Positions 3,932-37,400 of a DNA stretch of 64,000 bases are shown here, piece after piece. Location of the stretch: IMG/VR virus record IMGVR_UViG_3300040801_002079, positions 62,001 to 126,000 of that record. The stretch is one strand, 5' to 3'. A model generated the notes under the pieces. That model had not been told where the DNA came from. It saw nothing but the letters and a program-made list of their open reading frames with translations, and did no database searches. Positions within the stretch are counted from its first letter, which is position 1; each line of letters opens with the position of its first letter. The position numbers and the translations under genes were made by a program.

Positions 3932-4018
3932 TGGTGCCGAGGGCGGGACTCGAACCCGCATGGGATTTCTCCCGGCAGATTTTAAGTCTGCTGTGTATAC
4001 CAGTTCCACCACCCCGGC
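3932..4018 (-). tRNA. tRNA-Leu(TAA)
   Basis: GCCGGGG acceptor, GCAGA-CTTAAAA-TCTGC anticodon arm, long variable arm, GGTTCGAGTCC, encoded CCA. Confidence 0.97.
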
Positions 4019-6842: not shown

Positions 6843-7612
6843 CACGTTTGTGTGCATTTCTACACTCCGTGGACTATATCACCACCCTCGTCATTAACGT
6901 TAGGGTGCGGGTCGCTCTAGCTGGTCATTAAGGGGACTTTACCCCTCCAGTAGTCTCTGCACCTTCCTAGAGTGTACTCTAGGCTTGGCTCAAGGTTTTC
7001 ATAGTAACCCATACTTTCTTGCCCATTTTCGTGCTCCATTGTCGCTGACATTATATTTCCTTCCTATGGCTAACCATGAAAGGTGATTCATGTCTTGCTT
7101 CAATTCGCCCTTAGTGGGCTTTGTTTTCCCTCTTTGCTGCTGGTATTTTAACTCTTTATACTTACCAGCACATTCTTTCGAACAGGTGTGCTTCTGCTTT
7201 GCCTGTAGAGTTTGAAAACAAATCTCACAGTATGTCGGTTCGGTTACCTTAGAGTTCCCTGAATTCAACCCGTTCCTTTCATAACTTTCGTGTATGAAGG
7301 CACCAGTATCAATCCAGTTATGTATTTTAACATGGTCTCCCCGACTAAGAACAATGAGATTCTCACTCCTGTTATTAGATCGGTTACAATCAAGATGATG
7401 AACAACTTCATTACTTTCTAGCTGTCTACCTAGATTGGATTCCACGACAAGAATGTGTTCGTAAACCCATCCCTTCCAGTTATCACAATCCATACTTGAT
7501 TGATAATCAGGTCTATACAACAACCTGTAACCATTTAAATACCGAACTGTCTTTTTACTTGTATCCATATGACTATTTATATCATATTCGAACCAAAGAT
7601 ACAAGTTTTTTG
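6843..7612 (-). mobile_element. Group I intron (IC3-like) in the tRNA anticodon loop, carrying an HNH gene
   Basis: Inserted after exon U, ends in G; P (GGGTTGAATTCAGGGAACTC), Q (AACCTTGAGCCAAG), R (GTGCAGAGACTA) and S (GATATAGTCC) elements present. Confidence 0.92.
6999..7568 (-). CDS. Intron-encoded HNH homing endonuclease with C-terminal Zn-finger and HTH
   Basis: YEHILV...EVVHHLDCNRSNN..ENL...H...H; CEIC..CSKEC; WLAIGRKYNVSDNGARKW; TATAAATA at 7574-7581. Confidence 0.9.
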   Translation of the reverse strand: MDTSKKTVRYLNGYRLLYRPDYQSSMDCDNWKGWVYEHILVVESNLGRQLESNEVVHHLDCNRSNNRSENLIVLSRGDHVKIHNWIDTGAFIHESYERNGLNSGNSKVTEPTYCEICFQTLQAKQKHTCSKECAGKYKELKYQQQRGKTKPTKGELKQDMNHLSWLAIGRKYNVSDNGARKWARKYGLL

Positions 7613-21384: not shown

Positions 21385-21476
21385 GTTGCAGTGGCAGAGT
21401 CTGGTTATGCGCTGGATTGCAAATCCAGTTAGTGCTCGAAAGGGCCACGCGGGTTCAAATCCCGCCTGCAACTCCA
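21385..21476 (+). tRNA. tRNA-Cys(GCA) with an atypical long variable arm
   Basis: GTTGCAG/CTGCAAC acceptor, U73, CCA; CTGGA-TTGCAAA-TCCAG anticodon arm; about 20 nt variable region. Confidence 0.88.
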
Positions 21477-21520: not shown

Positions 21521-21937
21521 ATGAAATATTGTCCAGTTTGTGAAACAACCAAAGAATTATCTGAATTTAATAGAAATAAAGCAAAGAAGAACGGGGTTGC
21601 TTCTACGTGTCGTGAGTGTATGAAAATTTATAGGTCACGATATTACAAGAAAAACAAAGAACTTGTAATGGAGAAGGCATCTAAGCGTCGAATTGAACTT
21701 AAAGAATGGCTTGAAGATTATAAATCTGATAAAAAATGCATTAAATGTGGAATGGATCATCCAGCAACACTAGACTTCCATCATCGTGATGAATCAGAAA
21801 AAGAATTTAGTATTGCTACTGGCATTGGTCAATTGGGTAAAGGAAAACAATCGTTATTGGATGAAATAAATAAGTGTGATATACTATGTTCAAATTGCCA
21901 TAGAATATTACATTACGAAGAACGTAAGCGGGAGTAG
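21521..21937 (+). CDS. Free-standing HNH homing endonuclease
   Basis: CPVC..CREC N-terminal Zn motif; CIKCG....LDFHH...K...EINKCDILCSNCHR.LH; late promoter 21508-21515. Confidence 0.88.
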   Translation: MKYCPVCETTKELSEFNRNKAKKNGVASTCRECMKIYRSRYYKKNKELVMEKASKRRIELKEWLEDYKSDKKCIKCGMDHPATLDFHHRDESEKEFSIATGIGQLGKGKQSLLDEINKCDILCSNCHRILHYEERKRE

Positions 21938-22003
21938 CTCAGTTGGTAGAGCATCGGCCTTCCAAGCCGATTGTCGCGGGTTCGATCCCCGTCTCCCGCT
22001 CCA
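21928..22003 (+). tRNA. tRNA-Gly(TCC)
   Basis: GCGGGAG/CTCCCGC acceptor, TCGGC-CTTCCAA-GCCGA, GGTTCGATCCC, TCCA; 76 nt. Confidence 0.97.
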
Positions 22004-22038: not shown

Positions 22039-25000
22039 ACTTAATCGTTCTTGACAGCAGTTCCGAACAAAAGCTGGGTAAGGATCATCAGACCCCACAT
22101 ATCAACCCAACCAATGCTATTAATCATGGGAAACACATCAATCAAGACATTATTCCACAACCACATAGCGGGCCATGCTAGAAGGAATGACACCACGACT
22201 GCAAAGGCAATCATTCCTAAAAACGCTACAGCAATTTTCATAGACCTCTCCTTACTTGTTTTATTACCCCAATTATAGCAACAACTGCAACGAAAATGCA
22301 AATACCCTGTAAAATTTCCATCTCAACCTCTGGTAGTAGGTTAAAAAGATGCCCACCTCCGTCTCTGGTCCCTGCATACTGGGTTATGGCGTAAACATCA
22401 GGTCAGGACTTTTAGTTTCGATGCAATACCAATTCGATTCTAACGAGGTATGTATGCTTCCCGTTACGTGAAACCAATTTCTTTTCGCTTAAAACCTCCG
22501 TGGCTGATATAGGTGAAGAAAGGGGGTGCGGTTCGCTCCCAGAGGTGCAGTGCGCTCCTCTTCAATTCTCCGCCTAATCTTTAATGTGGTTGAGGTTGTT
22601 TCTTCAGTGTGTATATAGTACTACAAGTCGGATTCCATGTCAACCCTTCGAAGGGCGATTTCCATATCAATTTCCATTCCCTGAACCCACCATTCATCAC
22701 CGTAAGTGCTGTTACCGTCAATGTCCCAGTGTGTCTTTTCATTATTAGGGACAATGGCAGAGCACCCAGAAAGGAATAGGATTGATATAATGATTAGTTT
22801 CTTCATGACAATATTTATTCCACTACCGCAATGTCACCAATGTCATCATCATAGACATTGGAGATACCAGTAAGGGTATATTCATCAACCCATGAGAGTC
22901 CACACTCGTTACACATAATGGACTGCCATGCAATGTTGTTATCAACTTGAATGGAATCACCTTCAAAGTCACATCCCCCACAACGGGGACAGACACTTGA
23001 ATGTTCAAGGTACTTGGAATTTGAGATTGTTTGCACTGATAAAGACCTCTAGCGTATCAATTGCTTTTTGAGCAGAAGTACGATATTTTGAGTGATGGTA
23101 AAATGCACTACCACCTGACAATACATACCTCTCTCGGGTCAAAACATCCTTTGCATCAGAGAGCATAGCAAATATCTCTCGCTCAGTCAAAGACCATGTA
23201 ACATAGTTGCGGGTTTCATCTTCAATAAACCCCAACTCTGGAACACCATCATGAATCAGCAGACTGCTGAACAATGCTGGCAACTGTACTTCATAATATC
23301 TGTTCATACCACTCCCCTTGTGAAAGGATCAGGGGGAGTTTCCTCCCCCGTACCTTACAGGTGGCGACTAATTCTCAATTCTATCGTGTACTGGAACTGC
23401 ACCGTAGAAACGATGACCCAGCATCTTCTCAATTGCGTTACTGAAACGCGAGTCGGAAGTTGCGGCATAGTTTCCACCGAACATCGTCCACTGTCCCTCC
23501 CCCTCAAGAGGAACTAAACGTACACTGTTCAACGGACCCTTTTCCAGTTTGACCGCAGGACAATCATCCTTCGGCTCAAAGGGACCATCGACGTTCACAA
23601 CACAAAGTTCATTGTAGCGATTGGTGACACCGTTGCGGGTGCAATCGTAGGAATCTCGGGTGGTGTAAACGCTAACGATCATTCCCATGTCTCTTCTCCG
23701 TGGTGTGTTTCAGTAGGTATATAGTACCAAAACACACCCTCGAAGTCAAGTCATTGGAGTGAGTTTATAAAACTCCAGTATGGTATCATTGATAATGAAC
23801 CCAGACCCGAACGGTTTGGCTTTTTCAAAATCGTCACGGTCAAAGTAATATTCGTAATACTGTCCATCAAGATCATTACCGTAGATGGAGCAACACCACT
23901 CATCATCAGGATCATCGGGGTTCCATCCATAGTTCTGAGTAGCACATCCGTTTACGTACAGGATATGAGACTGTTCAAGCTGTTCAAAGATATCCATTAC
24001 TGTAATCCCCGTGAACCCATAGGAGCAATCTCCATGACTTCAACATAGTCCTCATTCGGATCATACTGTGACGTACCAGTTTGATCCCCGATTGTGTCCA
24101 GTGCAATACGATCTGCTTCTTCTTCATTAGCAGCATCAATCTCGTATTCACCAGAGACGTAGTAGGTCTTTGACCAATGTACAAGGTAACGTGGCATCAG
24201 TAAAATTTCCTCATGTTACGATGTGATGGGTCCACCGGATTCTTTGGTGGAGGATCAATCCCCAAATCGCAAATTTCACTGCAACCGGGATTACTGAAAT
24301 TGGCATGAATAAAGGGATCAATCTGTGATTCCCTTTCAAACGGACCATACATGGTACAGTCATTTTCTGAGTAAGCGTGTTCGAAGTTACCCAACTGAAG
24401 ATACCATTTACCGTCAGTGGCTTTGAACTTGATACAGGCACGAAGCTGAGACATCACTCTTCCTTCTGAATCTCGTCACAAGCGATTTCAAAATCTTCCA
24501 GTACACTCATACGGGAACGGTTGTACTCTTCCCCGATTCGTCCACAGGCACTTTCAACATCGTTGTAGGTGAAACTGCTGTTCATATAGGCATCCGCAAC
24601 TTCGAATACCTTTTCCATGTAAGTGTGATACGGTGTTCTCATTGTTGCTCCATTATAACATCACGAAACTTGGATTTCCACTCTGTAGAACCAAGGCAGG
24701 CGTGTTGTGCCCACGCATAGACCGGAACTTCTTCTGTATCCAGAGTTCGTCTCCAGATAACTTTCCCGAAGAGCAGGGTTTCTTCAACAAGGTACTGCAT
24801 CTTGTACGGTTCCTCATTAAAAGAACGGGCTAGCACTCGTTTACGAGTCGTGAACATTATTCGTTCTCCCACTTCTCGTAAAGGCGATCACTCATTTCCT
24901 GTACGTCACGATGGTTCACATTCATAATGGCGGCAATGTCACCAGTGGCGTGTGTCAGTGTAACGTAAGAGATGAGTCCATCGAAGTACAGAGAAGTGAC

Positions 25001-25084
25001 TTTCTCAATTGCTTCTTCAAGAACGTGATCCATGATGTTCTCCGTGATTTGATGGACACATAATACCAAAAGAGGGAATGCTTG

Positions 25085-25417
25085 TCAAGCGACAAGCATC
25101 CCGGTCATCGGATTGAAGGTGTAGCGAACACCCTTCAGGGAGCAGGACTTGACCTGTTCCAGATTGATCCGGCGAAATGCACCCTTGGTATCACCCGTGC
25201 GCTCCACCACGTTCATGTCGTACACGGTGAGGACGTTATTGCGCTTGTCCTCTGCTTCCCGGTGACCCTTGGGCAGAACACCCTTGACACCCTTCTTAAC
25301 GTGCATCCGGGCATTCATGGTGCGCAGGGAACCGTCAGTCTTCTTGACGAAGGTGACACCAAAGACCTGATCGGAGTTCCGAACCCGCTCGACAAATTCC
25401 TGAATCGTCATTTCCAT
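25085..25417 (-). CDS. SH3/WYL-like beta-barrel protein
   Basis: FGVTFVKKTDGSLRTM.A...VYDM.....FRRINL pattern. Confidence 0.6.
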   Translation of the reverse strand: MEMTIQEFVERVRNSDQVFGVTFVKKTDGSLRTMNARMHVKKGVKGVLPKGHREAEDKRNNVLTVYDMNVVERTGDTKGAFRRINLEQVKSCSLKGVRYTFNPMTGMLVA

Positions 25418-25495
25418 TGTAGTGCTCCCGTGGTTGATTTCCTTAATGTCTGGTAGACATTGTACACGAATATGGGATAGGTGTCAACCCCTTTG

Positions 25496-25530
25496 AAAAA
25501 GAAAAAGCCCCCGAGTTACTGGGGGCTTCT
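25496..25530 (-). terminator. Intrinsic terminator
   Basis: AAGCCCCC-N8-GGGGGCTT with a T-run on the minus strand. Confidence 0.75.
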
Positions 25531-25532
25531 CT

Positions 25533-25792
25533 TGGTGCATTGGACATGTACACCACATATATAAGTTTCATCCCACATGCCTGAGACTACATCCATTATT
25601 CGCATGGATTACGCCCACTCCGTGACAATAATAGGAGCAACATCCGGGTATATTACGTCAGGAGAGTTATGGATGCCTATAACTTCCTCAGATTCCTGAA
25701 AGATTGTCATGTCCCCATCATATATGGGGTATAGGGCTTTCAGTCGCATTCTCGCTGACCCTACTCAGCAAAGTGGGTGATCAGTCCACGAT
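25533..25792 (-). ncRNA. Candidate ~260 nt highly paired RNA
   Basis: Nested pairings CCCACU/AGUGGG, UGACAAU/AUUGUCA, UCAGGA/UCCUGA, CCCCAU/AUGGGG, AUCCAU/AUGGAU; followed by a terminator. Confidence 0.5.
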
Positions 25793-26067
25793 TCATATAG
25801 TATCAAATCCCTGTGTCCGTGTCAACCCATGGGGAATCAGAAAAGTGAATTGCGAAATCTTCAGACAGTATATGGTTACCGTCTCTGTCCCAATACACAC
25901 GGTATATAACATGGAAGAGACCGCAACGGCGCAACTCACGTACTCGGAATATATGATAGTGCTCACCCTCTTCAGGAACGTAGGAAGCGGCATATTCCTC
26001 AACGGTTTGATTTCCCAGATCAATAAACATGATGACATTATATCATGAAAAAAGTACTACCGAAAGC

Positions 26068-26253
26068 TTGACAGGCACCCTTGTTTTTAGTATAATGTAC
26101 CTACAGTCAAAGGAGAACTAACCCACTCCCAACAGCAAACAATAGGGTTAGGAAGTACCGGAGAGAGGGCCATGAGCAGGGGGAAATCTGTCTTTTTTAT
26201 TTTTTGCGCGAACCTGCTACTACCAGTATAACATATTTTCCAAGAGAATACAA
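26068..26253. ncRNA. Convergent-promoter small RNA module, copy 1
   Basis: TTGACA-17-TATAAT (+) faces TTGTAT-17-TATACT (-); CTAACCC/GGGTTAG stem with a CCCAACAGCAAACA loop. Confidence 0.55.
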
Positions 26254-26308
26254 GCTTGTTTCGAAGTTATTTTTGTGTTAAGCTCTTGGGGCTATGAGAA
26301 AATTGTAC

Positions 26309-26480
26309 TGTTGCATTTTTGCAACACAGTCGCCTATGTGTGGTAAAAAAACAACGGAAGTAAAATTCCGGAATCCCACTGTGCTTGGGTGTTATACCTC
26401 GGTACAACACCACCGTACCACATCACCCCACCAGACCAGAGACTGAATCTCCAATGGGTAAACCCCAATGGGGTTTTATC
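26309..26480. repeat. Origin-like module, copy 1 (TGTTG-N8-CAACA boxes and CACCCCACCAGACC / CCCAATGGGGTTTTA blocks)
   Basis: Direct sequence similarity to 35778-35970. Confidence 0.7.
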
Positions 26481-28399
26481 TATGGGGGTTACATTACGCA
26501 GAGCAGAAAGATAAAGTAACACCAATGTTATAACCTGTTGTACTTCAGGAAATGTCTTTATATTAGATAATGCTAATAAGGTACCATTTCACACTGTACC
26601 ACATTGCATTACATTGTATTACACATGCTTTTAGTAAAACAGGAACACGGTGTGCCTACAATGAGGGCAGTGTTTCTTTACCATGCCCTGATCAACGATG
26701 CCATCCTTTGAATAGGGTAGCAGCACACTGGTAACATTGTATCGATGCACTCTGAGCTTGCAGAGAAGGCTTCTAAGCCGGTTGTTTATAGTATTCAAGA
26801 ACTTCATCATATGATGCTGGGCGACAGCCCTCCTTAGGTACAACGAAGGGTGGAAGACCTTTGCAGCTTCCGTCCAGTAGTATTCCGTTAGGTCTATGCT
26901 CAATGTATGGGAAATAACAATTGCATGATGCTACGTAATACCACTCCCTCTCCATTAGTTTGTGTATATGCTTCATAGCTAAAAACAATTAGGGTTTTCG
27001 ATTTGAAAACCGAAATATCGTTTATGTATTTAGACCGGTAAATCGTTTTTAGGAATCATTCCTACTAACTTGGACACAACTTCTCCTTTGAGAGTTTCAT
27101 CCTCATAGTCAAAAGCGGAGTCATCGAACTCTGACTTTAACAGTAGACCATACCACTCGTCTATGTCACTATCGTATGACACGCAGTAGAGATGACGAGG
27201 ATTCTCATCACAGAACTCATAGTCTGTATATCCCTCATGACGTTGTACTATACCGCAATATTTAAACATGTTACCAGCCTCGTGTTAGGGCATCAAACCC
27301 CTCCGAATGATGCGTTAATGTGACAGGGCCAAATCATCATCATTCCAACTGAGTTTGCCACGTTCCCGGAGACCCGTGTGTTGTTATAGTCTCCTCAAAT
27401 TATTTTATAGTTGGAATGATGCCTGTATTATAGCACTTTCTTCGGCTCCTCTCCAGTGAACAACCGGTGAAAGAAACCGAATAACTTCCATGCAATCCAC
27501 CCCAAGCAAACCAGTGCAAGGGCAAACCAATGGAACCCGAGCATGAATGCATACACAATCAAACCGATTGTGAAGTACACGGCTGCGAAGGTTATGGCAA
27601 ACCCGATAAGGGCGAATATGAAATTGAAAAAGAGTTGAAGTAAGAACATGTCTACACCATGAAGAAAGGCTTTCTTTCTGTCTTCAGATAATGATAAGTC
27701 AGGGGATCATCCTTGGGGTGATCTGCTGGGTACACTTTCCGGAACCAGACTTCGTACTCACTCCAGAACTTCCACCATGGTGAGGTGAAGACGTACTCTA
27801 TGAACACGTAGTGATATTCTTTACCGGTAACCGGCTCGAAGAAGTATTGGGTCTTCCGGGGCTTGTCACTGAAGAGTTTCATCGTTCTGATATCACCTCA
27901 GAGACCCAGAAATCGATAACGTCCCAGTTGATACCAATCTCAGCGTCGAAGCGTCTCCTCAGGTTGTAGAGAACCGTCTTAAGCTCCACCTCAGACAGGG
28001 TGGTGTCATAGTTCTCCTCAGCAATGCTCATTACGTCCTCAGCGCTCCAGAGAATGGCAATGGCAAGACCGTCTTCAATCTTGTCAAGGTTACGCTCCAG
28101 TTGCTGGGCATGATCATATGCTGCATTAGTAAGGAATTGAATCATGATTATACCTCGAAGTCTCCGCTAAGCTCACAGTAGTCTGCAACCCACTCCACCT
28201 CAATACCATCGTGATTGAAACCACGAACGAGGAAGGAATGGTCATTAAGCTTCTTGATAAGTGAGACAGTACTACCTGCGCAGTCCTGTCGGGTGGAATC
28301 CTTGCGGGGCTGGTACGTAACGAACATGTTGTTAACTCCAGTTGGTTTTTGATGATGTAAACATTATAACCGATCATGCCCGAGATGTCAATCCCTCAT

Positions 28400-28430
28400 A
28401 AAAAAAGAGGGTGGATTTCTCCACCCTCTT
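28400..28430 (-). terminator. rII operon terminator
   Basis: AAGAGGGTGGA-GAAA-TCCACCCTCTTTTTTT on the minus strand. Confidence 0.85.
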
Positions 28431-28432
28431 CC

Positions 28433-28537
28433 CAACCTGCTGTTGGGTCTGGTACTCAACACAGGCACTTAGAAAGGAAACCAGACCGTTACCCCTTAGT
28501 ACGTTACACGGATCGCTTCTTAAGGGGACAGCAGTTG
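28433..28537 (-). ncRNA. Three-way-junction structure in the rIIB 3' region
   Basis: CUGCUGU/ACAGCAG closing stem, CCCCUUA/UAAGGGG and GGUCUGGU/ACCAGACC arms. Confidence 0.5.
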
Positions 28538-28544
28538 TCTCCCT

Positions 28545-29759
28545 CTAGGGCAATACGTGAGTCCAGCTTTCCCAATCACGAATCCTGCGAATGGTACGGT
28601 CACTGACACCGAACATCTTGGCAAGTGACGTAAGACTGTCGTAAGCACCCTGTTTCAGAATCTGTCGAATCTGCTTCACGGTCTTATCGTTCAGCTTGGC
28701 ACTTGCAGACGCTACAGGCGCATCATCCTCATCGTCCGTTGCTTCTGTATCATCCCAATCAAAGACTTCATCATCGGAATAGTCATCTGCTTCTACTTCG
28801 AACGCTCCCTCGTTGACACGGGCACCCGCAACAACTTCTTCGTTTAGAGCATCCCAAATGTACTGATCAGGATCACCAGCGCGGAAGTCTCGCGCACCCT
28901 GTCGAGTAACAAACGCATCGACAAGGACATCAGTGTCAGTGTCACGAACTTCCCAACGGAAACCGGACGTATCGAAATCAATTTCATCCTTGACTTCCGG
29001 TGACGGTTCCGAGTACTCGTTGGTGAACCACGGCTTGATGATATCATCCCAAGAGATTGCATCAACAATTTCGTACTTGCAAGCACGACCTTTGGCATTG
29101 TTGTAATCAGTAGGAATGGAAGTCACATCACGGGGATTGACTTTGACCACGACCACCTGATCATGGTTCTCCGTACCATACTGACCGAGATACCCTTCCG
29201 AGCAGAAGTGCAGACCCGTAGAGCAGGTACGTCCACGATTGAAATCACAGTCTGCACGGTTCATTTCCAGAACCTGTCCAACGCTGTTGTCCATCGTGCG
29301 AGTGTAGATATCCTTGAAGTCAGGAGTGACCATCTTGTATGCAAGGAAGTGACCATCAGCAGTGATGGGAAGATTGCAGGCTTCGATGAAACCGTAAATC
29401 TCTTCCACGATGGTTCCGCTCTCATTCGGATTGCTCATCACATTGTCGAGGAACAGAGTCAACGGAGTGATATCAAATCCTTCCTTGAACATTTCCACGA
29501 TACGGGTAGCAAGCAGAGCAGGAATCTTCTCGTACTTCTCTGAGCGGAGGATACCGTTCAGCAGGTACAGACCACCGTTACTTTCGGAAATCAGGCGACC
29601 CTTGATATCCAGAATCGTCGGGACCAGATCAAAGTTCTTGTCACGAATCGCGGCACGAACTTCATTGTATCGGTCATCACCTTTGTTGACTGTCATCGGC
29701 TTACCATCAATCACAAAGACGATGGAAGTCGGAGTCACGGTGTAAGCTAAATTACTCAT
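28545..29759 (-). CDS. rIIB: rIIB lysis-inhibition protein with acidic linker and C-terminal HTH
   Basis: LPITADGHFLAYK, MDNSVG...M.R..CD.....CSTGLH, KVNPRDVTSIPTDYNNAKGRACKY. Confidence 0.95.
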   Translation of the reverse strand: MSNLAYTVTPTSIVFVIDGKPMTVNKGDDRYNEVRAAIRDKNFDLVPTILDIKGRLISESNGGLYLLNGILRSEKYEKIPALLATRIVEMFKEGFDITPLTLFLDNVMSNPNESGTIVEEIYGFIEACNLPITADGHFLAYKMVTPDFKDIYTRTMDNSVGQVLEMNRADCDFNRGRTCSTGLHFCSEGYLGQYGTENHDQVVVVKVNPRDVTSIPTDYNNAKGRACKYEIVDAISWDDIIKPWFTNEYSEPSPEVKDEIDFDTSGFRWEVRDTDTDVLVDAFVTRQGARDFRAGDPDQYIWDALNEEVVAGARVNEGAFEVEADDYSDDEVFDWDDTEATDDEDDAPVASASAKLNDKTVKQIRQILKQGAYDSLTSLAKMFGVSDRTIRRIRDWESWTHVLP

Positions 29760-32158
29760 TTGTTTTCTCCTGTGTTGATACTAACGTTAGCGTAGTCAAT
29801 CACCGCTTTCTGGAACTCTTCTTTCTCACCTGAATACCACGGGGAGGAAACGTGATCCAGAAGTTTTAATTGACTGTTTACATTATCCACCATTTCGGTG
29901 TATTTGTCAACCGTTTCGGCAACAAAATCCGAGGGTTCTGGCAGATCAGAGTCACCCATGAAGCGCACCAATGCTTGAATTGCTTCGAACTTGGCTGACG
30001 GGTAACGCTTGTTAAAAAGTTTCTTAAAGCGAATCAGGGTGCGAACAGGATGGTTCTCATCCAAACGATCAAACTCTTCTTCGCTTACGGATTCGATTCG
30101 GGAAACAACTTTGGATTCACGAATCTTTTCACGAACCGCAATCAGGTTATTACGATTAACCAAATCAACCGGAACTTCCACATTCTCTCGCAGTTCCTTG
30201 ATCAAGTCCTGAATAGGCTTGAAACCGTATGTCAGGGCTTTATCGTACCGTGCGCGAGACAGGGCAAGGATAACCGTATTATCGTGGTCAAAATCCATCT
30301 CACTGTTCAGGTAGTGCTGGATGAATTGCAGATCGTCATATTCCAGACCTTCGATTTCGCACCTGTGCGTTTGGATAATGTACGCATCAGTATCAATCTT
30401 GGTCAGCGGAGTGTAGACATCCGTCCAGTACTTAGTAGAACCAAAACTGTGCTTCTCATGCTTGAACATCCGAGCAACAGGCGTGGTATTCGAACCGTAT
30501 GCAACCGTGCTGATGTTCTTGGGCAGTTCGATACTGGACAGGTAAACCAGTGTCAGATTATCATCGACAACCTCTTCCAGCATTTCCAGTGCATCATCAT
30601 CGTAGGTATCCAGAGTCAGCACTTCGCTACCTTGCAGACCATTTTCTTCTAAGTAGAACTTGATCTTTTTCAGGAACGAGTAACTATTGTCCCTGATGAA
30701 AACAATCCTGCTCTCAGTAGGGTTAATGAAAACATCACTGTTCAGGCGCGAGGTTTTACCATTGTGCTCATTGTACTCTGACCAGCGCAGTTTGTACTGG
30801 CGGTAGTGACCGTGGTTGGCAAGCTTCGTTTCCACGTTACCCTGATCATCTTCAATGTCAATCCATTTCAGGGAAGTGTAGTCACCCCAACCCGTGAGAG
30901 GCAGAGAGATAGCATTCTTGCTGTAACGGAAATTCGGATTTCCGACCATCTTGCGAACACGCTTCGATGACAGGTCAACAATGCTGAAATTGCGATTCAG
31001 GAAAACGGCTTTCTCATAGTCCGTCATAGAATCATCGTCAATGGAATCCAGCACGTAACCCGTGTACTCATCCATCGCTTCACGTTCACGTTCCTGAATC
31101 TTGGCAATCGTATCATCGTCGTACTGCAAATCCTCACGGGAGGCAGTAACCATGACTTCACCAATGTCAAACCGTGCAACCAGATTCTGCTGGAACAGGT
31201 TATTGCTCAGGTAACGAATGTTGTACGCATTATTACCAACGCAAGCGAATCCCTTGTTCCACGAATCACTGTCCAAATCCTCTTCGAACAGGATGAAGTG
31301 TTCACCCTTGTAAGCAACCTTCGGGAACTCCACTTCATCGTTCAACACGACAGGCAGGGGATCAAAGTACTTCAACTGATCCACAATCGCTTTCTTGAAC
31401 GTATGGTAGTCATCGGGAGCAACGGCAATCTTCACTTCCAGACCATTGTCCTCATCAGTATCAACCGTCATCATCAGATTGATTTGCGGCATACCGTGTT
31501 CGTTGGTCAGAATGTTGTAGACCCGCTTGATTCCATTGTACCGATTAGTAACAATGAAGTTATCGGTGTAGGCAAGCGGAGTCTTTGAACCGAGTCCAAA
31601 GGCACCCGTGAAGTCATTCGACTGTTCCTTCGTAGAACGAAAGTAGGTGCTGTAGAGAACCAACGTATCGTCAAACTCGACTGCAACGTCCTTACCGGAG
31701 AAGTCACCGGGAACACGCAGAACCGTTTGCTTGTTGGTATTGTCATACAGGATGGCACCAATGTTAACCGTCTCAGTTTCACCGAGAACGACCATGTTGA
31801 TACCTTCGATTTCCTTGCGGATATCACCGTCAATGAAGATGGTGGATTCACCTTCGTGCTCATTGACAATGTTAGCATTGTGCTTGAAGTAGCGCAGACC
31901 CGTACCGAAATCCTTCACTTCAAAATGAGGATCAAAGGCAGACGGGCAGGATACTTCGAACGGTACTTCCGGCTTACCAGCGGCGATATGTGCATCGTAA
32001 GCATTGGAGCACAGTTCACGAACAATCGTGGATTCGATTTCGGAGTACATTCCACTGGACAGAACGTTAAAGGCTTTACCGTTCATATCAATGCTGAAAT
32101 CGACATTGATGCTCATTCCAGCAGACTGTACAGACTTGGCTTGTGTATTGAGTTTCAT
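29756..32158 (-). CDS. rIIA: rIIA protein (GHKL ATPase N-domain)
   Basis: KAFNVLSSGMY...VRELCSNAYDAH, DFGTGL, STK..SN.FTGAFGLGSKTP.AYTD; ATGA-coupled to rIIB. Confidence 0.95.
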   Translation of the reverse strand: MKLNTQAKSVQSAGMSINVDFSIDMNGKAFNVLSSGMYSEIESTIVRELCSNAYDAHIAAGKPEVPFEVSCPSAFDPHFEVKDFGTGLRYFKHNANIVNEHEGESTIFIDGDIRKEIEGINMVVLGETETVNIGAILYDNTNKQTVLRVPGDFSGKDVAVEFDDTLVLYSTYFRSTKEQSNDFTGAFGLGSKTPLAYTDNFIVTNRYNGIKRVYNILTNEHGMPQINLMMTVDTDEDNGLEVKIAVAPDDYHTFKKAIVDQLKYFDPLPVVLNDEVEFPKVAYKGEHFILFEEDLDSDSWNKGFACVGNNAYNIRYLSNNLFQQNLVARFDIGEVMVTASREDLQYDDDTIAKIQEREREAMDEYTGYVLDSIDDDSMTDYEKAVFLNRNFSIVDLSSKRVRKMVGNPNFRYSKNAISLPLTGWGDYTSLKWIDIEDDQGNVETKLANHGHYRQYKLRWSEYNEHNGKTSRLNSDVFINPTESRIVFIRDNSYSFLKKIKFYLEENGLQGSEVLTLDTYDDDALEMLEEVVDDNLTLVYLSSIELPKNISTVAYGSNTTPVARMFKHEKHSFGSTKYWTDVYTPLTKIDTDAYIIQTHRCEIEGLEYDDLQFIQHYLNSEMDFDHDNTVILALSRARYDKALTYGFKPIQDLIKELRENVEVPVDLVNRNNLIAVREKIRESKVVSRIESVSEEEFDRLDENHPVRTLIRFKKLFNKRYPSAKFEAIQALVRFMGDSDLPEPSDFVAETVDKYTEMVDNVNSQLKLLDHVSSPWYSGEKEEFQKAVIDYANVSINTGENK

Positions 32159-33291
32159 ATGACCTTCCGTGTAAAGGTTAATCTCTAAATGTGGATACAT
32201 TATAGGTGATATCGTATCCAATGTCAAGTGCTTAGTGAAACTTTTTTTAAACTAGATTTCGGGCTTCCATTTCATCGATGATGTTCTGGTACAACTGGAA
32301 CACCTCTGGGGGCGGAGTACATTCTTCACACATAGAGTTTAGGGTGCCTTCCACACTCTTGTGCATCATTTGTAAATCTTCATCCGCAAGTTCTGATAGT
32401 ATTATAGGACTACCTTTCTGCATTGTCAAGGTACTCGTTTCCAGAGTCAACCAATAAGTTTACCACATTTTTACTGATCATGTCAAATATCGTACTGAAC
32501 TCATCTTCCTTGGTTTGCTCTGGTACAGCCGCAAGAGATGGATTACATAGGGCAAACTCCAGAAGCATACGAGATTGAACAGCAGCAGCATCCTCAGCGT
32601 GTTTTCGCATGTTGGCTCGTATGGCATCAACATCCGCTTTATGTTCGCTTAGACGTTGCTCCAGAAATAATTCGAATTGTTGTACTTTCTTATCCCAAGG
32701 GTTCATAATGTTATAGTTATCCTTTCAGTACTCTTATTTATAGAAATCAGGACAACAAGTTAACTTTGGGAACAAACTCAATCATATCCATGACAGTGTA
32801 TGCTGTATCCCATTCTTCTGGCATTGGGAGAGTCGGGATCACTTCATCGATGTACAGACCGACATCTGGACGATAGGGTTCAAAGTTAACATGATCCTGA
32901 ATGTCAGAAACAATATCATCAGCGTGATCCTCAGAGGTTGCTTCCACAATAAAGAAGGCAGGGACAATGTAACGTTTCGTAGACATCATAGTTTCCTCTA
33001 GATGACTTCACCGTCAAACACTTCCAGATCACGAATGAGCATGTTATCCATGGTCCAGTTGGTCATCAGGGAATTAACGTATTCAATGACTTTGGCATTG
33101 ACTGAGTTTAGATCAACAGTGCTATAGATGCAGCGGCTTGATCCCGAATCGGGGCGGCACATTACAAGGTAATCCAGATCACTAATGCGATAGCTTGCAA
33201 TGAGAGGTCCTTCATGCTGGTACTTCTCAAAGTGAAGCTTGGCTAGCATTTCATTCGTGCTGGGCATAATGTTCTCCGTGTAAAGAAAAAG

Positions 33292-33453
33292 TGGTGGTCA
33301 GGTAGGCTTCGAACCCTACATAGGACAATGTTGTCAAACGGTCTTGTGTTTCTGTTTCGGACGCATCCTACTACAGAAAGCTTTTCCTGTTTTCCTGTGA
33401 ATGTACCGGGGCATATCTTTGGGCAAATGATACATTCATTAAACTACTGACCA
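33292..33453 (-). ncRNA. tRNA-mimic RNA (acceptor and T arm with about 115 nt of unrelated internal structure)
   Basis: UGGUCAG-UAG start, GUAGG-GUUCGAAG-CCUAC-CUGACCA-CCA end; internal GAAUGUAUC/GGUACAUUC and UUUCUGU/ACAGAAA stems. Confidence 0.65.
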
Positions 33454-35121
33454 CTCCGATTCATGTACTATGTGGAAATCAATTGGCAAAATGCCTAGCA
33501 CATGAACCCAACGTTCTGGTGATGCTCCCCCGCCCTGTGCATGGGGTTAAAAAGGGAGCACCACACTCCATTCAATCAACTCGGGTGACAAACACCTCAC
33601 CGTCCTTGATAAAGGACATTATAGCATACTGGTACATATATGCAACCTCTCCATCACGTTCCCACTTCACAAGCGGAAACAGATCGGGGTCTTCAGGGTA
33701 ACGGTAGACACCATTGGCATCAACTTCACCACCCTTCATTTCAAACAAACCGAATCCATAGTTGTCATCAACCTGCTTCTGAAATGAATCTTCAGTCGTG
33801 ACATCAATCCAGTACGGAATCAATCCACATGCGTCCACCAGATACTCAGGTTCAACGTCACTGAAATGATCAGTCGGGTCAACCTCAAACCGATGCTGGG
33901 GATGAATAGACATAGTTGACATACTGTGTACTCCGTGTTTGTTTAACGATGAAACAATGTTACCACAGTGAAATCAGGATTGCAACCCTGCGGCACGTTT
34001 ATACAGATTGTACCCTGCTTTGTGATCGTTTGCATCACCATCACTTGACCATGTAAAATCATCATTAACCGCTTCCAATGCAAACAGGGTAGCGACCACG
34101 ATTTCATCATAGGGTCTACGGGCAGTCTTACAGAATTCTCCTCTGGCACCATCCCGGTAAACCACGAAGGTTTCATAACCATCGTCATCGACACCGTTGA
34201 AGCGAATCCTGTCTCCATCAATCATCGGAGGTTTGGGAACATCATATTCAAACTGTACCGGGACGCTTGAAGCATTGATGATCTTACCAGCAAGCTCAGT
34301 AGCTTTCTTCCACTGCTCGGGGGTAAACCCACGGTGACTCCAATAATGCGTGTAACCCATGTTAGTGCTCCTGTGTGTAATGAGAGAGGTCAGTATACTC
34401 CACTTCACGGGAAAATACAACCGCAATCAGTTCATCCAGATAACGAATATGCTTAATGAACCATGCAACATCCGATTCATTACCGGCTTGCTTATGTTCA
34501 ATAAGTCGTTCGACACAATGCATTTGATCCCTTCGTAAAACTCTCCAGAGATTCTCGGTATCAGTAGCATCCAGTTCGAATTCAAATTTCATCCAAACTA
34601 TCCGTATATGAATTAACGATAATAGCGATAATTTCTAAATGCATGTCAACCATCCATGGCTCAGGGGCATCTTTTATTTCTTCACCTACCGGCTCAACGA
34701 AGATATTACATCCATCAGTGAATTCAATAAAGAGATTAAGGTCTGATTCCATTTCAACTGTCTTAATCGTTTTACCTATCAAGTGCTGAAGGTCTGATTC
34801 GTGTGTTACTATTTTATGCATGGTTATATACCCATTTAGTTACAAGTTACTATCGAACCGTCCGTATTATACTTCACAGACGCACCAGAGGTGAACTGGA
34901 GGTACTGAACACCGTCTACACAGATTTCACTGTACCCTGTAAACTTGGCACCAACCCGTTCCATCTGACCACAACCGGACATTGCTACAGCAACAATGAT
35001 AATAGACGGTAGGAACATGAGCACCGGGAGGATACGACTAATGTATTTGTTTTCTTCTTGCATGACATTCTCCATTCAAATGTTGCGACATTATAACATG
35101 GAAAAAAGTTAGGGTAAAGGC

Positions 35122-35308
35122 TTGACAATGCTGGCAGCATTTGGTATTATACTAACCATCAAAGGAAGTTGAAGCAGACGCACCCAACAACCAACATATA
35201 TGTCTGCGAAGTAACCTACGAAGCACTGCGGTTGTCGAAGTCTATCTTTTTTATATAAAAGGAAACATCCGCTACTATAAGTATATCATAATAGCGGATG
35301 CATTGCAA
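35122..35308. ncRNA. Convergent-promoter small RNA module, copy 2
   Basis: TTGACA-17-TATTAT (+) faces TTGCAA-17-TATACT (-); GCAGAC/GTCTGC stem with a CCCAACAACCAACA loop. Confidence 0.55.
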
Positions 35309-35317
35309 GTGATGTGT

Positions 35318-35527
35318 TTAACTGCCCCGATTGACAGTATGTGAAATATCCAATAGCTGATCAATGAAGTTCTTTACGACATCTTTATCCAATCCGGATT
35401 TTTTAATGTCCATCGCAAGCTGTTTGCATTTCCCAGCAACAACTGATCCCAAATCCTCACCTTCGGTTATAACCTCATCATTAGATTCAACCAACAGATC
35501 ATTCCATTTGTCTTCCCAGTTTTTCAT
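35318..35527 (-). CDS. Small late protein with LVES/ITEG putative protease-cleavage motifs
   Basis: GATAAATA at about 35550 and a GGAG RBS upstream. Confidence 0.6.
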   Translation of the reverse strand: MKNWEDKWNDLLVESNDEVITEGEDLGSVVAGKCKQLAMDIKKSGLDKDVVKNFIDQLLDISHTVNRGS

Positions 35528-35559: not shown

Positions 35560-37400
35560 TTGCTTGACTTGATAACATCGTTTTGGTATAATGTACTTAA
35601 TGGAGATACATGAGAGACGGTAGGGGGGAGGGTGGACGATTATATTATAAATTCCTAATTTAGTACTAATTGATATTCCTCAAGGGGGTTGACACTTGAT
35701 CCCCAATTTGATACAGTATACCCATCATCATCATTCTAGCTGACGCTGGAAGGGTGGTGTTCGCCCTCATGAAAGTTTGTTGTATAAATACAACAGACTA
35801 CAGGAGAGTGTTGCTTATGTACAACATTGTGGTAAAAAAACAACAGAACCAAACTTCTGTTGTATCCCCGCAACATAGGTGTACTACTACACTACAACAC
35901 CACCGGGGTACGACACCCCACCAGACCCCGAAACGGAAAAGCCAATGGCAATTCCCAATGGGGTTTTAAAATCCCAATGACAATTTCCAATAGACATTCA
36001 CAATAGAAAAAATAGACATTTTTGCATATAGTCAAAACGGTCAAATTTGATATATACTTATAACATGCGCGGTTTTTGAAAACGGAATTAAAAGTGGGAC
36101 TTCCCTGTCCCTTTGGGCCTCGAACTTCCCTTTCAAGAATTACTCAACTGAACTTGGGTCGGAGGAATATAAAAGGTAACATTCCTCACGAATTAACCTT
36201 TCTCCTCCGGTAGCATAAAGAACCATTCCATCTGGTCCCATATTAACACCCGATATAACATGAAAACGAACCTGACCATTTTCTCCAATGGTTGCAACTG
36301 TATCATTCATCTGAGGAGTCAGTTCACTCTCTTCAGTGCACGGTCCATATAATTCTATTTCTAGTCTTCTGTTCATAAACGTATTTAGCTCCCTTTTCAA
36401 AAGTTGTATTTTTACCTGTTAACGGTTTTTTACAATGCTCATACTGTTTTAATTATACTATTATTTAGAATGCCAAAAACAATTAGGGTTTTCAAAACCA
36501 AAACCGAAATATCGTTTAGGGGTTTTGAAATGAAAACCGAAATATCGTTTGGAATATTGTCTAATATTCTGCTTCAGTATACTTGCAACAGTTTGAGCAT
36601 TGTGTTATAATACACTCTGTTAAACAACATAGGAAAGTACAATGCCACAAGACTTAATGACATGGGTTGCTGGATTCTCTGTTGCAGGGTTCATCTACCT
36701 TCTCTACCGTAACTGGATAATGTCCCACGCTATTCAAACCTTGTGGGAAACGTTCAAATCGGAAACTGAACGCATGGAGTCTGATCATCATCTTGAAAAA
36801 GCACTTAACGATACTCTGATTGGTAGTTTTATTGAAACGATTGAGAGGTTCGATGAGCGTTTGAACATTATTGAAAAGGGTATGGACATTGTAGAAGAAC
36901 AATCAGGAGAAACTAATGAATGACCTTAAGGCATTAGGGACTATTATATCTTTGGGTGGAGCTTTCTTACTCCATGATATGCCATGGAATCATTTTGTAG
37001 GTATAATACTAATGGTTATAGGATTCTTTTTCTGGATGAGGGAATTAGATTAGATTAGAAAAAACTAATATATTAATCCCGTAGGGGTAAAGTAAACTAA
37101 GTCTTTGATTTAGTTGAAGATTAAGTTTTTGCCTATTTGTAGGAAAAACAATTTGGGCATTGATCGCGCCCTATGGTAAAACCGATTTATATGCATTCTC
37201 CCCACAAAAATACCACAATGTCCCAACTTTCCCCACAAATTGCCCCGTTATTGACCTTTTCTATTCTGTTGAAAGCCTTGATCTATAGCCATTTTCTTCT
37301 ATTTATATCAGAATGATATCACAATGATATCACAATGCCATCAAAGTGGGTTTTTCGGGGTAATTTTCTGTTCACATAATTGATCTATCCCCCTTCCTGT
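35560..37400. other. Putative replication origin / strand-divergence region
   Basis: Gene orientation switches divergently here; four TGTTG-N8-CAACA boxes, CCAAT repeats, tandem AAAACCGAAATATCGTTT repeats, a G-run after the promoter at 35564, AT-rich stretches. Confidence 0.5.

What the first reader, a model, noticed from the sequence alone, without database searches (positions are those of the whole stretch)
26068..35308. Two paralogous small RNAs between convergent promoters, with a covarying stem and conserved CA-rich loop
Seen: 26068-26253 and 35122-35308 share one layout: + promoter, CAAAGGA, hairpin, GAAGTA, TCT(G/A)TCTTTTTT, GCTACTA, then a - promoter facing back. The stems differ completely (CTAACCC/GGGTTAG versus GCAGAC/GTCTGC) while the loop CCCAACA.C.AACA is kept, which is covariation within one genome. 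Each copy precedes an array of TGTTG-N8-CAACA boxes. Inference: sense/antisense RNA pairs, perhaps regulating priming at the adjacent origin-like modules.
Basis: partly seen in the sequence, partly recalled or inferred. Interest (0 to 1): 0.72.

Follow-up and report, generated by a model that had tools for sequence, protein, structure and literature searches.

The report
Conserved phage small RNAs, convergent promoters
The two look-alike stretches are real genes for short folded RNAs, each faced by a promoter on the opposite strand. The same design is kept in at least nine related uncultured giant phages, so it is a new phage RNA family whose job is still unknown.

Summary
Modules 26058-26266 and 35112-35320 share one layout and are the only two copies in a 316.8-kb jumbo phage from a microbial mat.

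I fetched relatives through rIIA homologues (42-62% aa identity) and found 13 more copies in eight other phage contigs. The transcribed part is 74-89% identical in nucleotides, against 60-70% for the rIIA/rIIB genes.

All 15 copies keep two promoters:
- a + strand TTGACA-N16-18-TATAAT promoter;
- a facing - strand promoter with a 17-nt spacer and an extended -10, 114-138 nt away.

The 5' hairpin has 13 different stems in 15 copies. All pair, with 6 G.U and no A.C on the + strand. A small 3' hairpin before the U-run changes only G-C to G.U. So the + strand is the folded one.

It is not coding, not in Rfam, and not in GenBank phages.

The loop is only A/C-rich in relatives, not fixed. Copy B is not next to an array. 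A third, G-rich module (35564-35645) is the positional counterpart of copy A.

My best reading is a countertranscript pair at early promoters. Origin priming is not excluded, but the geometry does not favour it. Metatranscriptome contigs gave no support for transcription.

The parts
26040..26045 (-). -10 box (TATAAT) of a proximal leftward promoter, back to back with P+ of copy A and 7 nt before the ATG at 26030 (possibly a leaderless gene)
   Evidence: Direct reading; this block aligns with copy B
26068..26096 (+). P+ of copy A: TTGACA-N17-TATAAT
   Evidence: 12/12; kept in all 15 copies with variable spacers
26103..26205 (+). Predicted small RNA A (A-type), about 95-103 nt: SD-like 5' AAAGGAG, hairpin P1, purine-rich core, hairpin P3, U-run
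   Evidence: Ends inferred from promoter and U-run. 74-89% nt identity to orthologues against 60-70% for rIIA/rIIB. Not coding
26118..26151 (+). P1 hairpin of A: 7-bp stem, 20-nt A/C-rich loop
   Evidence: 5 of 7 pairs show double changes, 98% of cells paired, 0/500 shuffles
26178..26205 (+). P3 hairpin (AGGGGG-AAAU-CUGUCU) followed by U6-A-U6: a weak intrinsic-terminator-like end
   Evidence: changes are only G-C to G.U, 97% paired. Missed by the simple terminator scan
26225..26253 (-). P- of copy A: TTGTAT-N17 (ending TGT)-TATACT, an extended -10, with start near 26218
   Evidence: conserved in all 15 copies
35090..35118 (-). Proximal leftward promoter of copy B (TTTACC-N17-TATAAT) for the lipoprotein-like gene 34836-35063
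35122..35150 (+). P+ of copy B: TTGACA-N17-TATTAT
35157..35252 (+). Predicted small RNA B (B-type), about 96 nt
   Evidence: 75-86% nt identity to orthologues. Its roughly 40-nt core is identical in three phages
35168..35215 (+). P1a (GUUG/UAAC) plus P1 (GCAGAC/GUCUGC) of B, with a 22-nt loop
   Evidence: 4 of 6 and 2 of 4 pairs show double changes
35226..35252 (+). P3 of B (CUGCGG-UUG-UCGAAG), a 6-nt spacer, then U6
   Evidence: 100% paired; changes are only G-C to G.U or A-U to G.U
35265..35308 (-). P- of copy B (35308-35280), overlapping the 16-bp terminator hairpin (35301-35265) of the 69-aa gene 35318-35527
35564..35645 (+). Third module type (G-type): a sigma-70 promoter followed by an invariant G-rich core. 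It is the positional counterpart of copy A in cassette B
   Evidence: (D6)
26305..26480 (.). Array A: a TGTTGC-N6-GCAACA palindrome, a - strand terminator (26370-26340), GGTGT..ACACC, a C/A-rich tract and CCAATGG repeats
35775..35975 (.). Array B: the same composite (- strand terminator at 35863-35840)
26773..26976 (-). Conserved 65-71-aa cassette gene (A side); confident small beta-barrel model
36140..36376 (-). Conserved 78-81-aa cassette gene (B side); confident five-strand beta-barrel model
26978..27045 (.). 'Tail' of cassette A: a GGTTTTC..GAAAACC hairpin plus the CGAAATATCGTTT motif
36472..36570 (.). 'Tail' of cassette B: two tandem copies of the same unit

Best explanation
Each module is a gene for a short (about 100 nt) non-coding RNA read from the + strand.

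How the RNA is built:
- It starts at a near-consensus host sigma-70 promoter.
- It opens with an unpaired AAAGGAG stretch.
- It then folds a 6-7-bp hairpin that holds open a 11-22-nt A/C-rich loop.
- A nearly invariant core follows.
- It ends in a small G.U-rich hairpin followed by a U-run.

The antisense partner: about 15-20 nt beyond the U-run sits a conserved extended -10 promoter on the other strand. Its transcript must run antisense across the whole small-RNA gene and the + promoter, and on into the next leftward early genes.

Most likely mechanism: the abundant + RNA is a countertranscript. It pairs with the 5' leader of the leftward transcript, starting at the open loop. Head-on polymerase traffic between the two promoters adds to the effect. 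Together these would throttle or time the leftward transcription that starts at this boundary.

Shown: sequence layout, conservation of both promoters, RNA-type covariation on the + strand, absence of coding.

Inferred: transcript ends, the pairing, and the regulatory outcome.
For: - Fifteen copies in nine phage contigs or genomes.
- Transcribed part 74-89% identical, against 60-70% for the rIIA/rIIB DNA.
- P1 has 13 distinct stems and 96 pairs, all paired, with 6 G.U and 0 A.C. Covariation beats 500/500 shuffles and all slid controls.
- P3 and P1a vary only through G.U.
- Both promoters are present in 15/15 copies with a fixed architecture and free spacers. The -10 boxes lie 114-138 nt apart.
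- Loops vary while stems covary, which is the pattern seen in antisense-RNA recognition loops (my own knowledge of ColE1 RNA I and R1 CopA).
- The gene left of the module is not conserved except in the nearest relative, so the module belongs to the boundary rather than to one gene.
- B-type copies lie inside leftward gene strings, where only an antisense or insulating role makes positional sense.
Against: - No transcript was seen. Three metatranscriptomes of the source sample gave contigs on a nearby 250-nt transcript and on rIIB, but none on module A, and no sampled words of region B were held. Short RNAs are usually lost from such libraries and contigs cannot show absence.
- A purely cis-antisense role does not explain why the core between P1 and P3 is almost invariant. 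A 21-nt stretch is identical in 8 A-type copies and about 40 nt are identical in 3 B-type copies.
- The 3' hairpin is weak. In B-type a 6-nt spacer separates it from the U-run, so the 3' end is uncertain.
- Single-sequence folding is no more stable than shuffles.
Confidence: 0.42

Rival explanations
1. A trans-acting small RNA or protein-binding RNA. The invariant core, the 5' AAAGGAG and the A/C-rich (AAN-repeat) loop would bind a host or phage partner, such as an Hfq-like chaperone, ribosomes or an mRNA. The facing promoter would only tune the RNA's level.
For: - The core is near-invariant across phages whose rIIA proteins are only 42-62% identical.
- There are two or three distinct subtypes, each conserved as an orthologous set.
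- The layout of promoter, hairpin, single-stranded stretch and hairpin plus U-run resembles enterobacterial Hfq-dependent sRNAs (my own knowledge).
- Loops carry AAC/AAG/AAA repeats.
Against: - No complementary site above chance in the phage genome.
- The host is unknown, so host targets could not be searched.
- The resemblance of the B core to 16S rRNA helix 45 (a 9-10-mer) is no better than shuffles.
- No Rfam match.
Confidence: 0.28
2. One reading: the + transcript enters the adjacent repeat array, which is a replication origin. It primes or activates the origin through an R-loop, and the antisense promoter controls this in a ColE1-like way.
For: - A-type and G-type modules always lie just upstream of a conserved array with CCAATGG repeats (2-5 copies) at roughly 11-14 bp spacing.
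- The cassette occurs twice, flanking the rII operon, in most relatives.
- Cassette B sits at the strand switch and at a local minimum of cumulative GC skew.
- The G-type core and the A-type core are G-rich on the non-template strand, which favours R-loops (my own knowledge).
- T4 oriE likewise combines an early promoter, iterons and a transcription switch (PMC3016281).
Against: - The array-directed RNA is the short folded one with a hairpin and U-run.
- The antisense promoter lies between it and the array and points away, so its product cannot enter the array.
- B-type copies, including the second copy of this finding, are separated from arrays by genes on the other strand (470 nt here, 2.4 kb in L071).
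- No RNA contig runs from module A into the array.
- GC skew here simply follows gene direction.
- The role of iterons is unproven even in T4.
Confidence: 0.15
3. DNA-level regulatory cassette only. On this view the modules are composite promoter/terminator punctuation of early transcription units, like the PeSLs of T4-type phages, with no functional RNA.
For: - The window is an early-type region dense in sigma-70 promoters and terminator-promoter composites on the - strand.
- PeSLs are conserved intergenic promoter plus stem-loop units (PMC4122927).
Against: - There are only 2-3 copies per genome.
- The promoters converge rather than following a terminator on the same strand.
- Stem covariation has a strand-specific G.U bias.
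- About 60 nt of non-promoter sequence is conserved.
Confidence: 0.07
4. A small-protein gene. In A-type copies GGAG-N8-ATG opens a 19-21-codon hydrophobic ORF, which with the antisense promoter would make a type I toxin-antitoxin-like pair.
For: In three phages the ORF keeps its length. In L072 the ATG moves two codons upstream in frame.
Against: - The ATG is absent in L078a and L079.
- There are 2-nt length shifts and an early stop in the two L071 copies.
- B-type copies have a 1-nt insertion and 11-nt loop-length differences upstream of a perfectly conserved sequence.
Confidence: 0.03

Closest known systems
Countertranscript (cis-antisense) RNA systems with face-to-face promoters, such as ColE1 RNA I/RNA II, R1 CopA/CopT and pCF10 Anti-Q/Qs
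   Same: - Two converging promoters about 130 nt apart.
- A short folded RNA fully complementary to the 5' part of a longer transcript.
- A hairpin that presents an open loop.
- Loops differ between copies while stems covary.
   Different: - Found in a lytic-type jumbo phage rather than a plasmid.
- A single large 11-22-nt loop instead of several 5-7-nt loops.
- The long transcript feeds assorted early genes, not a replication primer or rep gene.
- A near-invariant core that cis pairing does not require.
- No expression data.
PeSL (promoter-early stem-loop) cassettes of T4-type phages (PMC2839356, PMC4122927)
   Same: Conserved intergenic units built around near-consensus sigma-70 early promoters and a stem-loop, in regions of small variable early genes.
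   Different: - A PeSL is a terminator stem-loop followed by a promoter on the same strand.
- PeSLs come in many copies per genome and are proposed to drive recombination.
- Here there are 2-3 copies, convergent promoters, about 100 nt of conserved transcribed sequence and RNA-type covariation.
T4 oriE-type origin region (early promoter plus iterons near a transcription switch; PMC3016281)
   Same: The surrounding cassette has an early promoter, evenly spaced short repeats, small conserved early genes and, for cassette B, a strand switch with a skew turn.
   Different: No evidence of replication initiation here. The repeats are 7-nt palindromes rather than 12-nt direct repeats. The antisense promoter and folded RNA have no described counterpart at oriE.
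Hfq-dependent trans-acting sRNAs of Gram-negative bacteria
   Same: Own promoter, length of about 100 nt, 5' single-stranded stretch, A-rich (AAN) tract, and a 3' hairpin with a U-tail (A-type).
   Different: The 3' hairpin is weak and spaced from the U-run in B-type. No target was found. The host and any chaperone are unknown.

Membership tests
Cis-antisense countertranscript system | Two promoters on opposite strands whose transcripts overlap | tested here: met
   Promoter consensus and position are kept in 15/15 copies, with the -10 boxes 114-138 nt apart. This rests on sequence only and was not confirmed by RNA data.
Cis-antisense countertranscript system | Short RNA with a stable stem-loop presenting an accessible loop | tested here: met
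   P1 covariation. The loop is predicted to be unpaired.
Cis-antisense countertranscript system | Demonstrated effect on the overlapping target transcript | not testable with these tools
   Needs transcription or expression assays.
ColE1-like primer control / R-loop origin | The regulated long RNA runs into the origin and is the target of the antisense RNA | tested here: not met
   The RNA directed at the array is the short one. The antisense promoter points away from the array. B copies are not adjacent to arrays.
ColE1-like primer control / R-loop origin | Replication initiates at the adjacent element | not testable with these tools
   Only indirect signs: repeats and a skew turn at B.
PeSL cassette | Terminator stem-loop directly followed by an early promoter on the same strand, in many copies per genome | tested here: not met
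   Two copies in 316.8 kb, convergent promoters, and a 20-nt loop. Definition taken from PMC4122927.
Type I toxin-antitoxin | Conserved small hydrophobic ORF with a start codon and ribosome-binding site | tested here: not met
   Start codon lost in L078a and L079. Frame shifts occur with conserved downstream nucleotides.
Any Rfam family | Covariance-model match | tested here: not met
   No hit at the gathering threshold, nor at E<=10 on either module.
Hfq-type trans sRNA | Rho-independent terminator hairpin immediately followed by a U-tail | tested here: inconclusive
   A-type has a 5-bp G.U-rich hairpin directly followed by U6. B-type has a 6-nt spacer. Neither is picked up by the simple scan.
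Hfq-type trans sRNA | Conserved seed complementary to target mRNAs | tested here: inconclusive
   No phage site above chance. The host genome is unknown.

The most novel reading that the evidence does not exclude
The roughly 1-kb cassettes that flank the rII operon may be the replication origins of a new clade of jumbo phages. Each cassette holds a folded or G-rich promoter-proximal RNA module, a facing promoter, CCAATGG repeats, a small beta-barrel protein gene and a repeat 'tail'. On this reading the small RNA/antisense pair (A- and G-type), or its displaced + DNA strand, would set up or gate an RNA-dependent initiation event. That would be a plasmid-style antisense copy control inside a lytic giant phage.
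Probability: 0.13. Interest if true: 0.85.

Novelty: new variant of a known kind. Interest (0 to 1): 0.62.

Why it matters
Regulatory RNAs of jumbo phages are almost unexplored, and this clade is known only from metagenomes.

Here comparison alone gives a well-supported new RNA family:
- three subtypes;
- 15 or more copies;
- rich covariation;
- strand assigned by G.U pairs;
- a conserved antisense promoter;
- a fixed position beside a repeat-bearing cassette on both sides of the rII operon.

This offers a concrete, cheap test object of about 250 bp of DNA. It can address how giant phages time early transcription with host polymerase. If the cassette turns out to be an origin, it can also address how such phages start replication.

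Tried and rejected
- **Rfam:** no match at gathering or permissive thresholds.
- **GenBank phages:** megablast and blastn found nothing.
- **Exact module and array patterns:** in IMG/VR and JGI metagenome contigs they gave only chance hits, which I checked by eye. A single-protein search of IMG/VR for rIIA found no close relative.
- **The 69-aa neighbour gene:** it led only to identical copies of the same phage.
- **Coding hypotheses:** a 19-aa hydrophobic peptide in A and a UUG/GUG-started ORF in B were both rejected. Start codons are lost and frames shift while the downstream nucleotides stay conserved.
- **Mimicry of the 16S rRNA 3' end (shared CUGCGGUUG):** not above shuffles against E. 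coli rrsH.
- **Trans targets in the phage genome:** complementary 10-14-mers occur at chance frequency.
- **Long-range helix GAAGUA / UACUA (P2):** the boxes are complementary, but the pairs never covary and L079 and L080 break them. I leave it open.
- **RNAalifold on the mixed A+B alignment:** it gave nothing because the stems were misaligned, so the types were analysed separately.
- **Bacterial genomes:** the A-core pattern was absent. My B-core pattern had the wrong spacer length, so its null result means nothing.
- **Cassette proteins:** Pfam and PHROGs were silent on them. Fold searches gave only weak SH3/Tudor/Sm-like similarities (E > 0.05).


Full report
**What the window is.** The window is bases 62001-126000 of a 316,801-bp virus record with direct terminal repeats. 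It was assembled from a microbial-mat metagenome. rIIA (29756-32227, -) and rIIB (28545-29759, -) lie between the two copies of the finding. The nearest named phages are Xanthomonas jumbo phages, at only 31-34% rIIA identity. There is no nucleotide match in 50,697 GenBank phage records. The region is dense in near-consensus sigma-70 promoters and small genes on the - strand. In that respect it resembles a T4-type early region.

**Checking the observation.** The two stretches align throughout and have the stated order of elements. The composite motifs occur exactly twice in the genome. Scans of IMG/VR and JGI metagenome contigs with the same composites returned only unrelated sequences. The hairpins are 26118-26151 and 35174-35207.

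Taken alone they are unimpressive. The minimum free energy is no better than for shuffles, and Rfam has nothing. The box pattern TGTTG-N8-CAACA is enriched: 11 matches with up to one mismatch against 3.7 expected, and all four exact matches lie next to the modules. However, copy A has a single exact box. Copy B's boxes begin about 470 nt away, beyond a 69-aa gene on the - strand and two further + promoters.

**Relatives.** Neighbouring small proteins led only to identical assemblies of the same phage. rIIA homologues of 42-62% identity gave contigs with 10-kb flanks. A profile of the modules found 12 further copies there. An invariant 21-mer found one more in IMG/VR. That makes 15 copies in nine phage genomes or contigs.

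They fall into an A-type (eight copies) and a B-type (seven copies, three of them divergent). Both types are usually present in one phage at the same places relative to rIIA/rIIB, so the duplication is old. The transcribed part is 74-89% identical to the window's copies, while rIIA/rIIB DNA is 60-70% identical. The small flanking proteins are 47-60% identical. That level of nucleotide conservation in non-coding DNA points to function.

**Promoters.** In all 15 copies the + promoter keeps TTGACA (or a close variant), a 16-18-nt spacer and a TATAAT-like box. The - promoter keeps a TTG-type -35 box, a 17-nt spacer ending in TGn, and TATACT or TATAAT. The spacers themselves differ freely. The two -10 boxes are 114-138 nt apart. 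Immediately left of the + promoter, a second leftward promoter serves the next gene (26045-26040; 35118-35090).

As a check on such predictions, the sample's metatranscriptomes contain contigs covering 25526-25779. These match a predicted - strand promoter (25825-25797) and terminator (25531-25502).

**RNA structure.**
- *P1 hairpin.* It has 13 different stem sequences in 15 copies. All 96 positions pair, with six G.U and no A.C.
- *A-type alignment.* Five of seven P1 pairs show changes on both sides and 98% of cells pair. The covariation score exceeds all 500 shuffles and all slid controls.
- *B-type alignment.* Four of six P1 pairs covary. An outer 4-bp helix changes in step as GUUG/UAAC, GGUG/CACC and AGUG/UACU.
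- *P3 hairpin.* This small hairpin sits before the U-run. It is 97-100% paired and varies only between G-C or A-U and G.U.

Every one of these wobble pairs would be an A.C mismatch on the other strand. So the + strand is the one selected to fold. This cannot separate + RNA from displaced + strand DNA.

In A-type the P3 hairpin abuts U6-A-U6, which is terminator-like. In B-type six bases intervene, so the 3' end is an inference.

The loop is not conserved in sequence among relatives. It stays A/C-rich and contains AAN repeats. The core between P1 and P3 is nearly invariant.

**Not coding.** An SD-ATG in A-type opens a 19-21-codon hydrophobic frame. The ATG is missing in two copies, and 2-nt length changes or an early stop occur in two others. 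In B-type, a 1-nt insertion and 11-nt loop-length differences lie upstream of perfectly conserved sequence.

**Context.** Each phage carries two cassettes of about 1 kb flanking the rII operon. Each cassette holds, in order:
- a promoter-proximal module;
- an 'array';
- a small conserved gene on the - strand;
- a 'tail' of repeated units.

The array is composite. Part of it is simply a - strand intrinsic terminator; the conserved A-run is that terminator's U-tract. The TGTTG..CAACA palindromes vary in relatives without compensation, which suggests protein sites rather than RNA stems. CCAATGG occurs 2-5 times at roughly 11-14 bp spacing.

Cassette B sits at the switch from leftward to rightward genes and at a local minimum of cumulative GC skew. 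This is not independent of gene direction.

In cassette B the element that corresponds in position to module A is not module B. It is a third, G-rich module (35564-35645). It is conserved in four relatives and in some is followed by the same - promoter box. B-type modules lie further left, between genes of the leftward string.

The two cassette proteins give confident small beta-barrel models with only weak SH3/Tudor/Sm-like matches.

**Interpretation.** The safest statement is that these are genes for folded + strand RNAs of about 100 nt, each overlapped by a conserved antisense promoter. I rank the mechanisms as follows.
- *Countertranscript or transcription-interference unit (0.42).* It would act on the leftward transcript that starts at the facing promoter. 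This fits the geometry of all copies, the variable loop with covarying stem, and the lack of a conserved downstream gene.
- *Trans-acting or protein-binding RNA (0.28).* This best explains the invariant core, but no target was found.
- *Origin priming (0.15).* The cassette looks origin-like and T4 oriE offers a parallel. However, the antisense promoter points away from the array, the array-directed RNA is the short one, and copy B is not next to an array.
- *PeSL-like punctuation and a small toxin gene.* Both are unlikely.

**Limits.**
- There is no direct evidence of transcription from either promoter of the modules.
- The host is unknown.
- Transcript ends are inferred.
- Copies within one clade are not independent, so shuffle counts overstate significance. 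The many distinct stems show several independent events.

Noticed in passing
window 35564-35645: A third conserved promoter-proximal element. A sigma-70 promoter is followed by an invariant G-rich core (GG..GGGGGG.GGG.GG) with no convincing helix. It could form a G-quadruplex or favour an R-loop. Orthologues are in L070, L073, L075 and L076, sometimes with the same facing-promoter box as the A/B modules.
   Followed up: partly
window 25526-25779 (-): The only strongly covered stretch in three metatranscriptomes of the source sample (word depth 23-34, against 3-5 on rIIB). It fits a - strand transcript of about 270 nt from promoter 25825-25797 to terminator 25531-25502, carrying a 46-aa ORF (25609-25749).
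   Followed up: partly
window 26978-27045, 36472-36570; genome 59592-59637 (outside the window): A repeated unit containing a GGTTTTC..GAAAACC hairpin and the CGAAATATCGTTT motif. There is one copy at cassette A, two in tandem at cassette B and a third locus elsewhere. It is conserved in relatives just upstream of the small cassette genes and may be an operator or terminator.
   Followed up: partly
window 26773-26976 (-) and 36140-36376 (-): Two unrelated small proteins conserved in the cassettes of relatives (31-69% identity). AlphaFold models are confident (pLDDT 87). Both are small beta-barrels with only weak SH3/Tudor/Sm-like matches, and there are no Pfam or PHROG hits.
   Followed up: partly
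window 26030-26045 (-): The 75-aa gene 25803-26030 has no Shine-Dalgarno sequence. A TATAAT box ends 7 nt before its ATG, so the mRNA may be leaderless.
   Followed up: no
window 6850-7320 (-): A group I intron (Rfam RF00028, 62 bits). tRNA genes lie at 3932-4018 (-), 21385-21476 and 21928-22003.
   Followed up: no
window 25459-25531 (-): A strong terminator hairpin is directly followed by a consensus early promoter on the same strand. This is a PeSL-like composite, and several similar ones lie in the leftward gene string.
   Followed up: no
L079 1990-5702 and 8856-12252: One relative's contig carries two rIIA-rIIB pairs in tandem, about 3 kb apart.
   Followed up: no
window 24501-30400 (run X5): A food metagenome from 2022 holds short contigs of a phage about 95% identical to this one. 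One of them matches the cassette-B tail.
   Followed up: no
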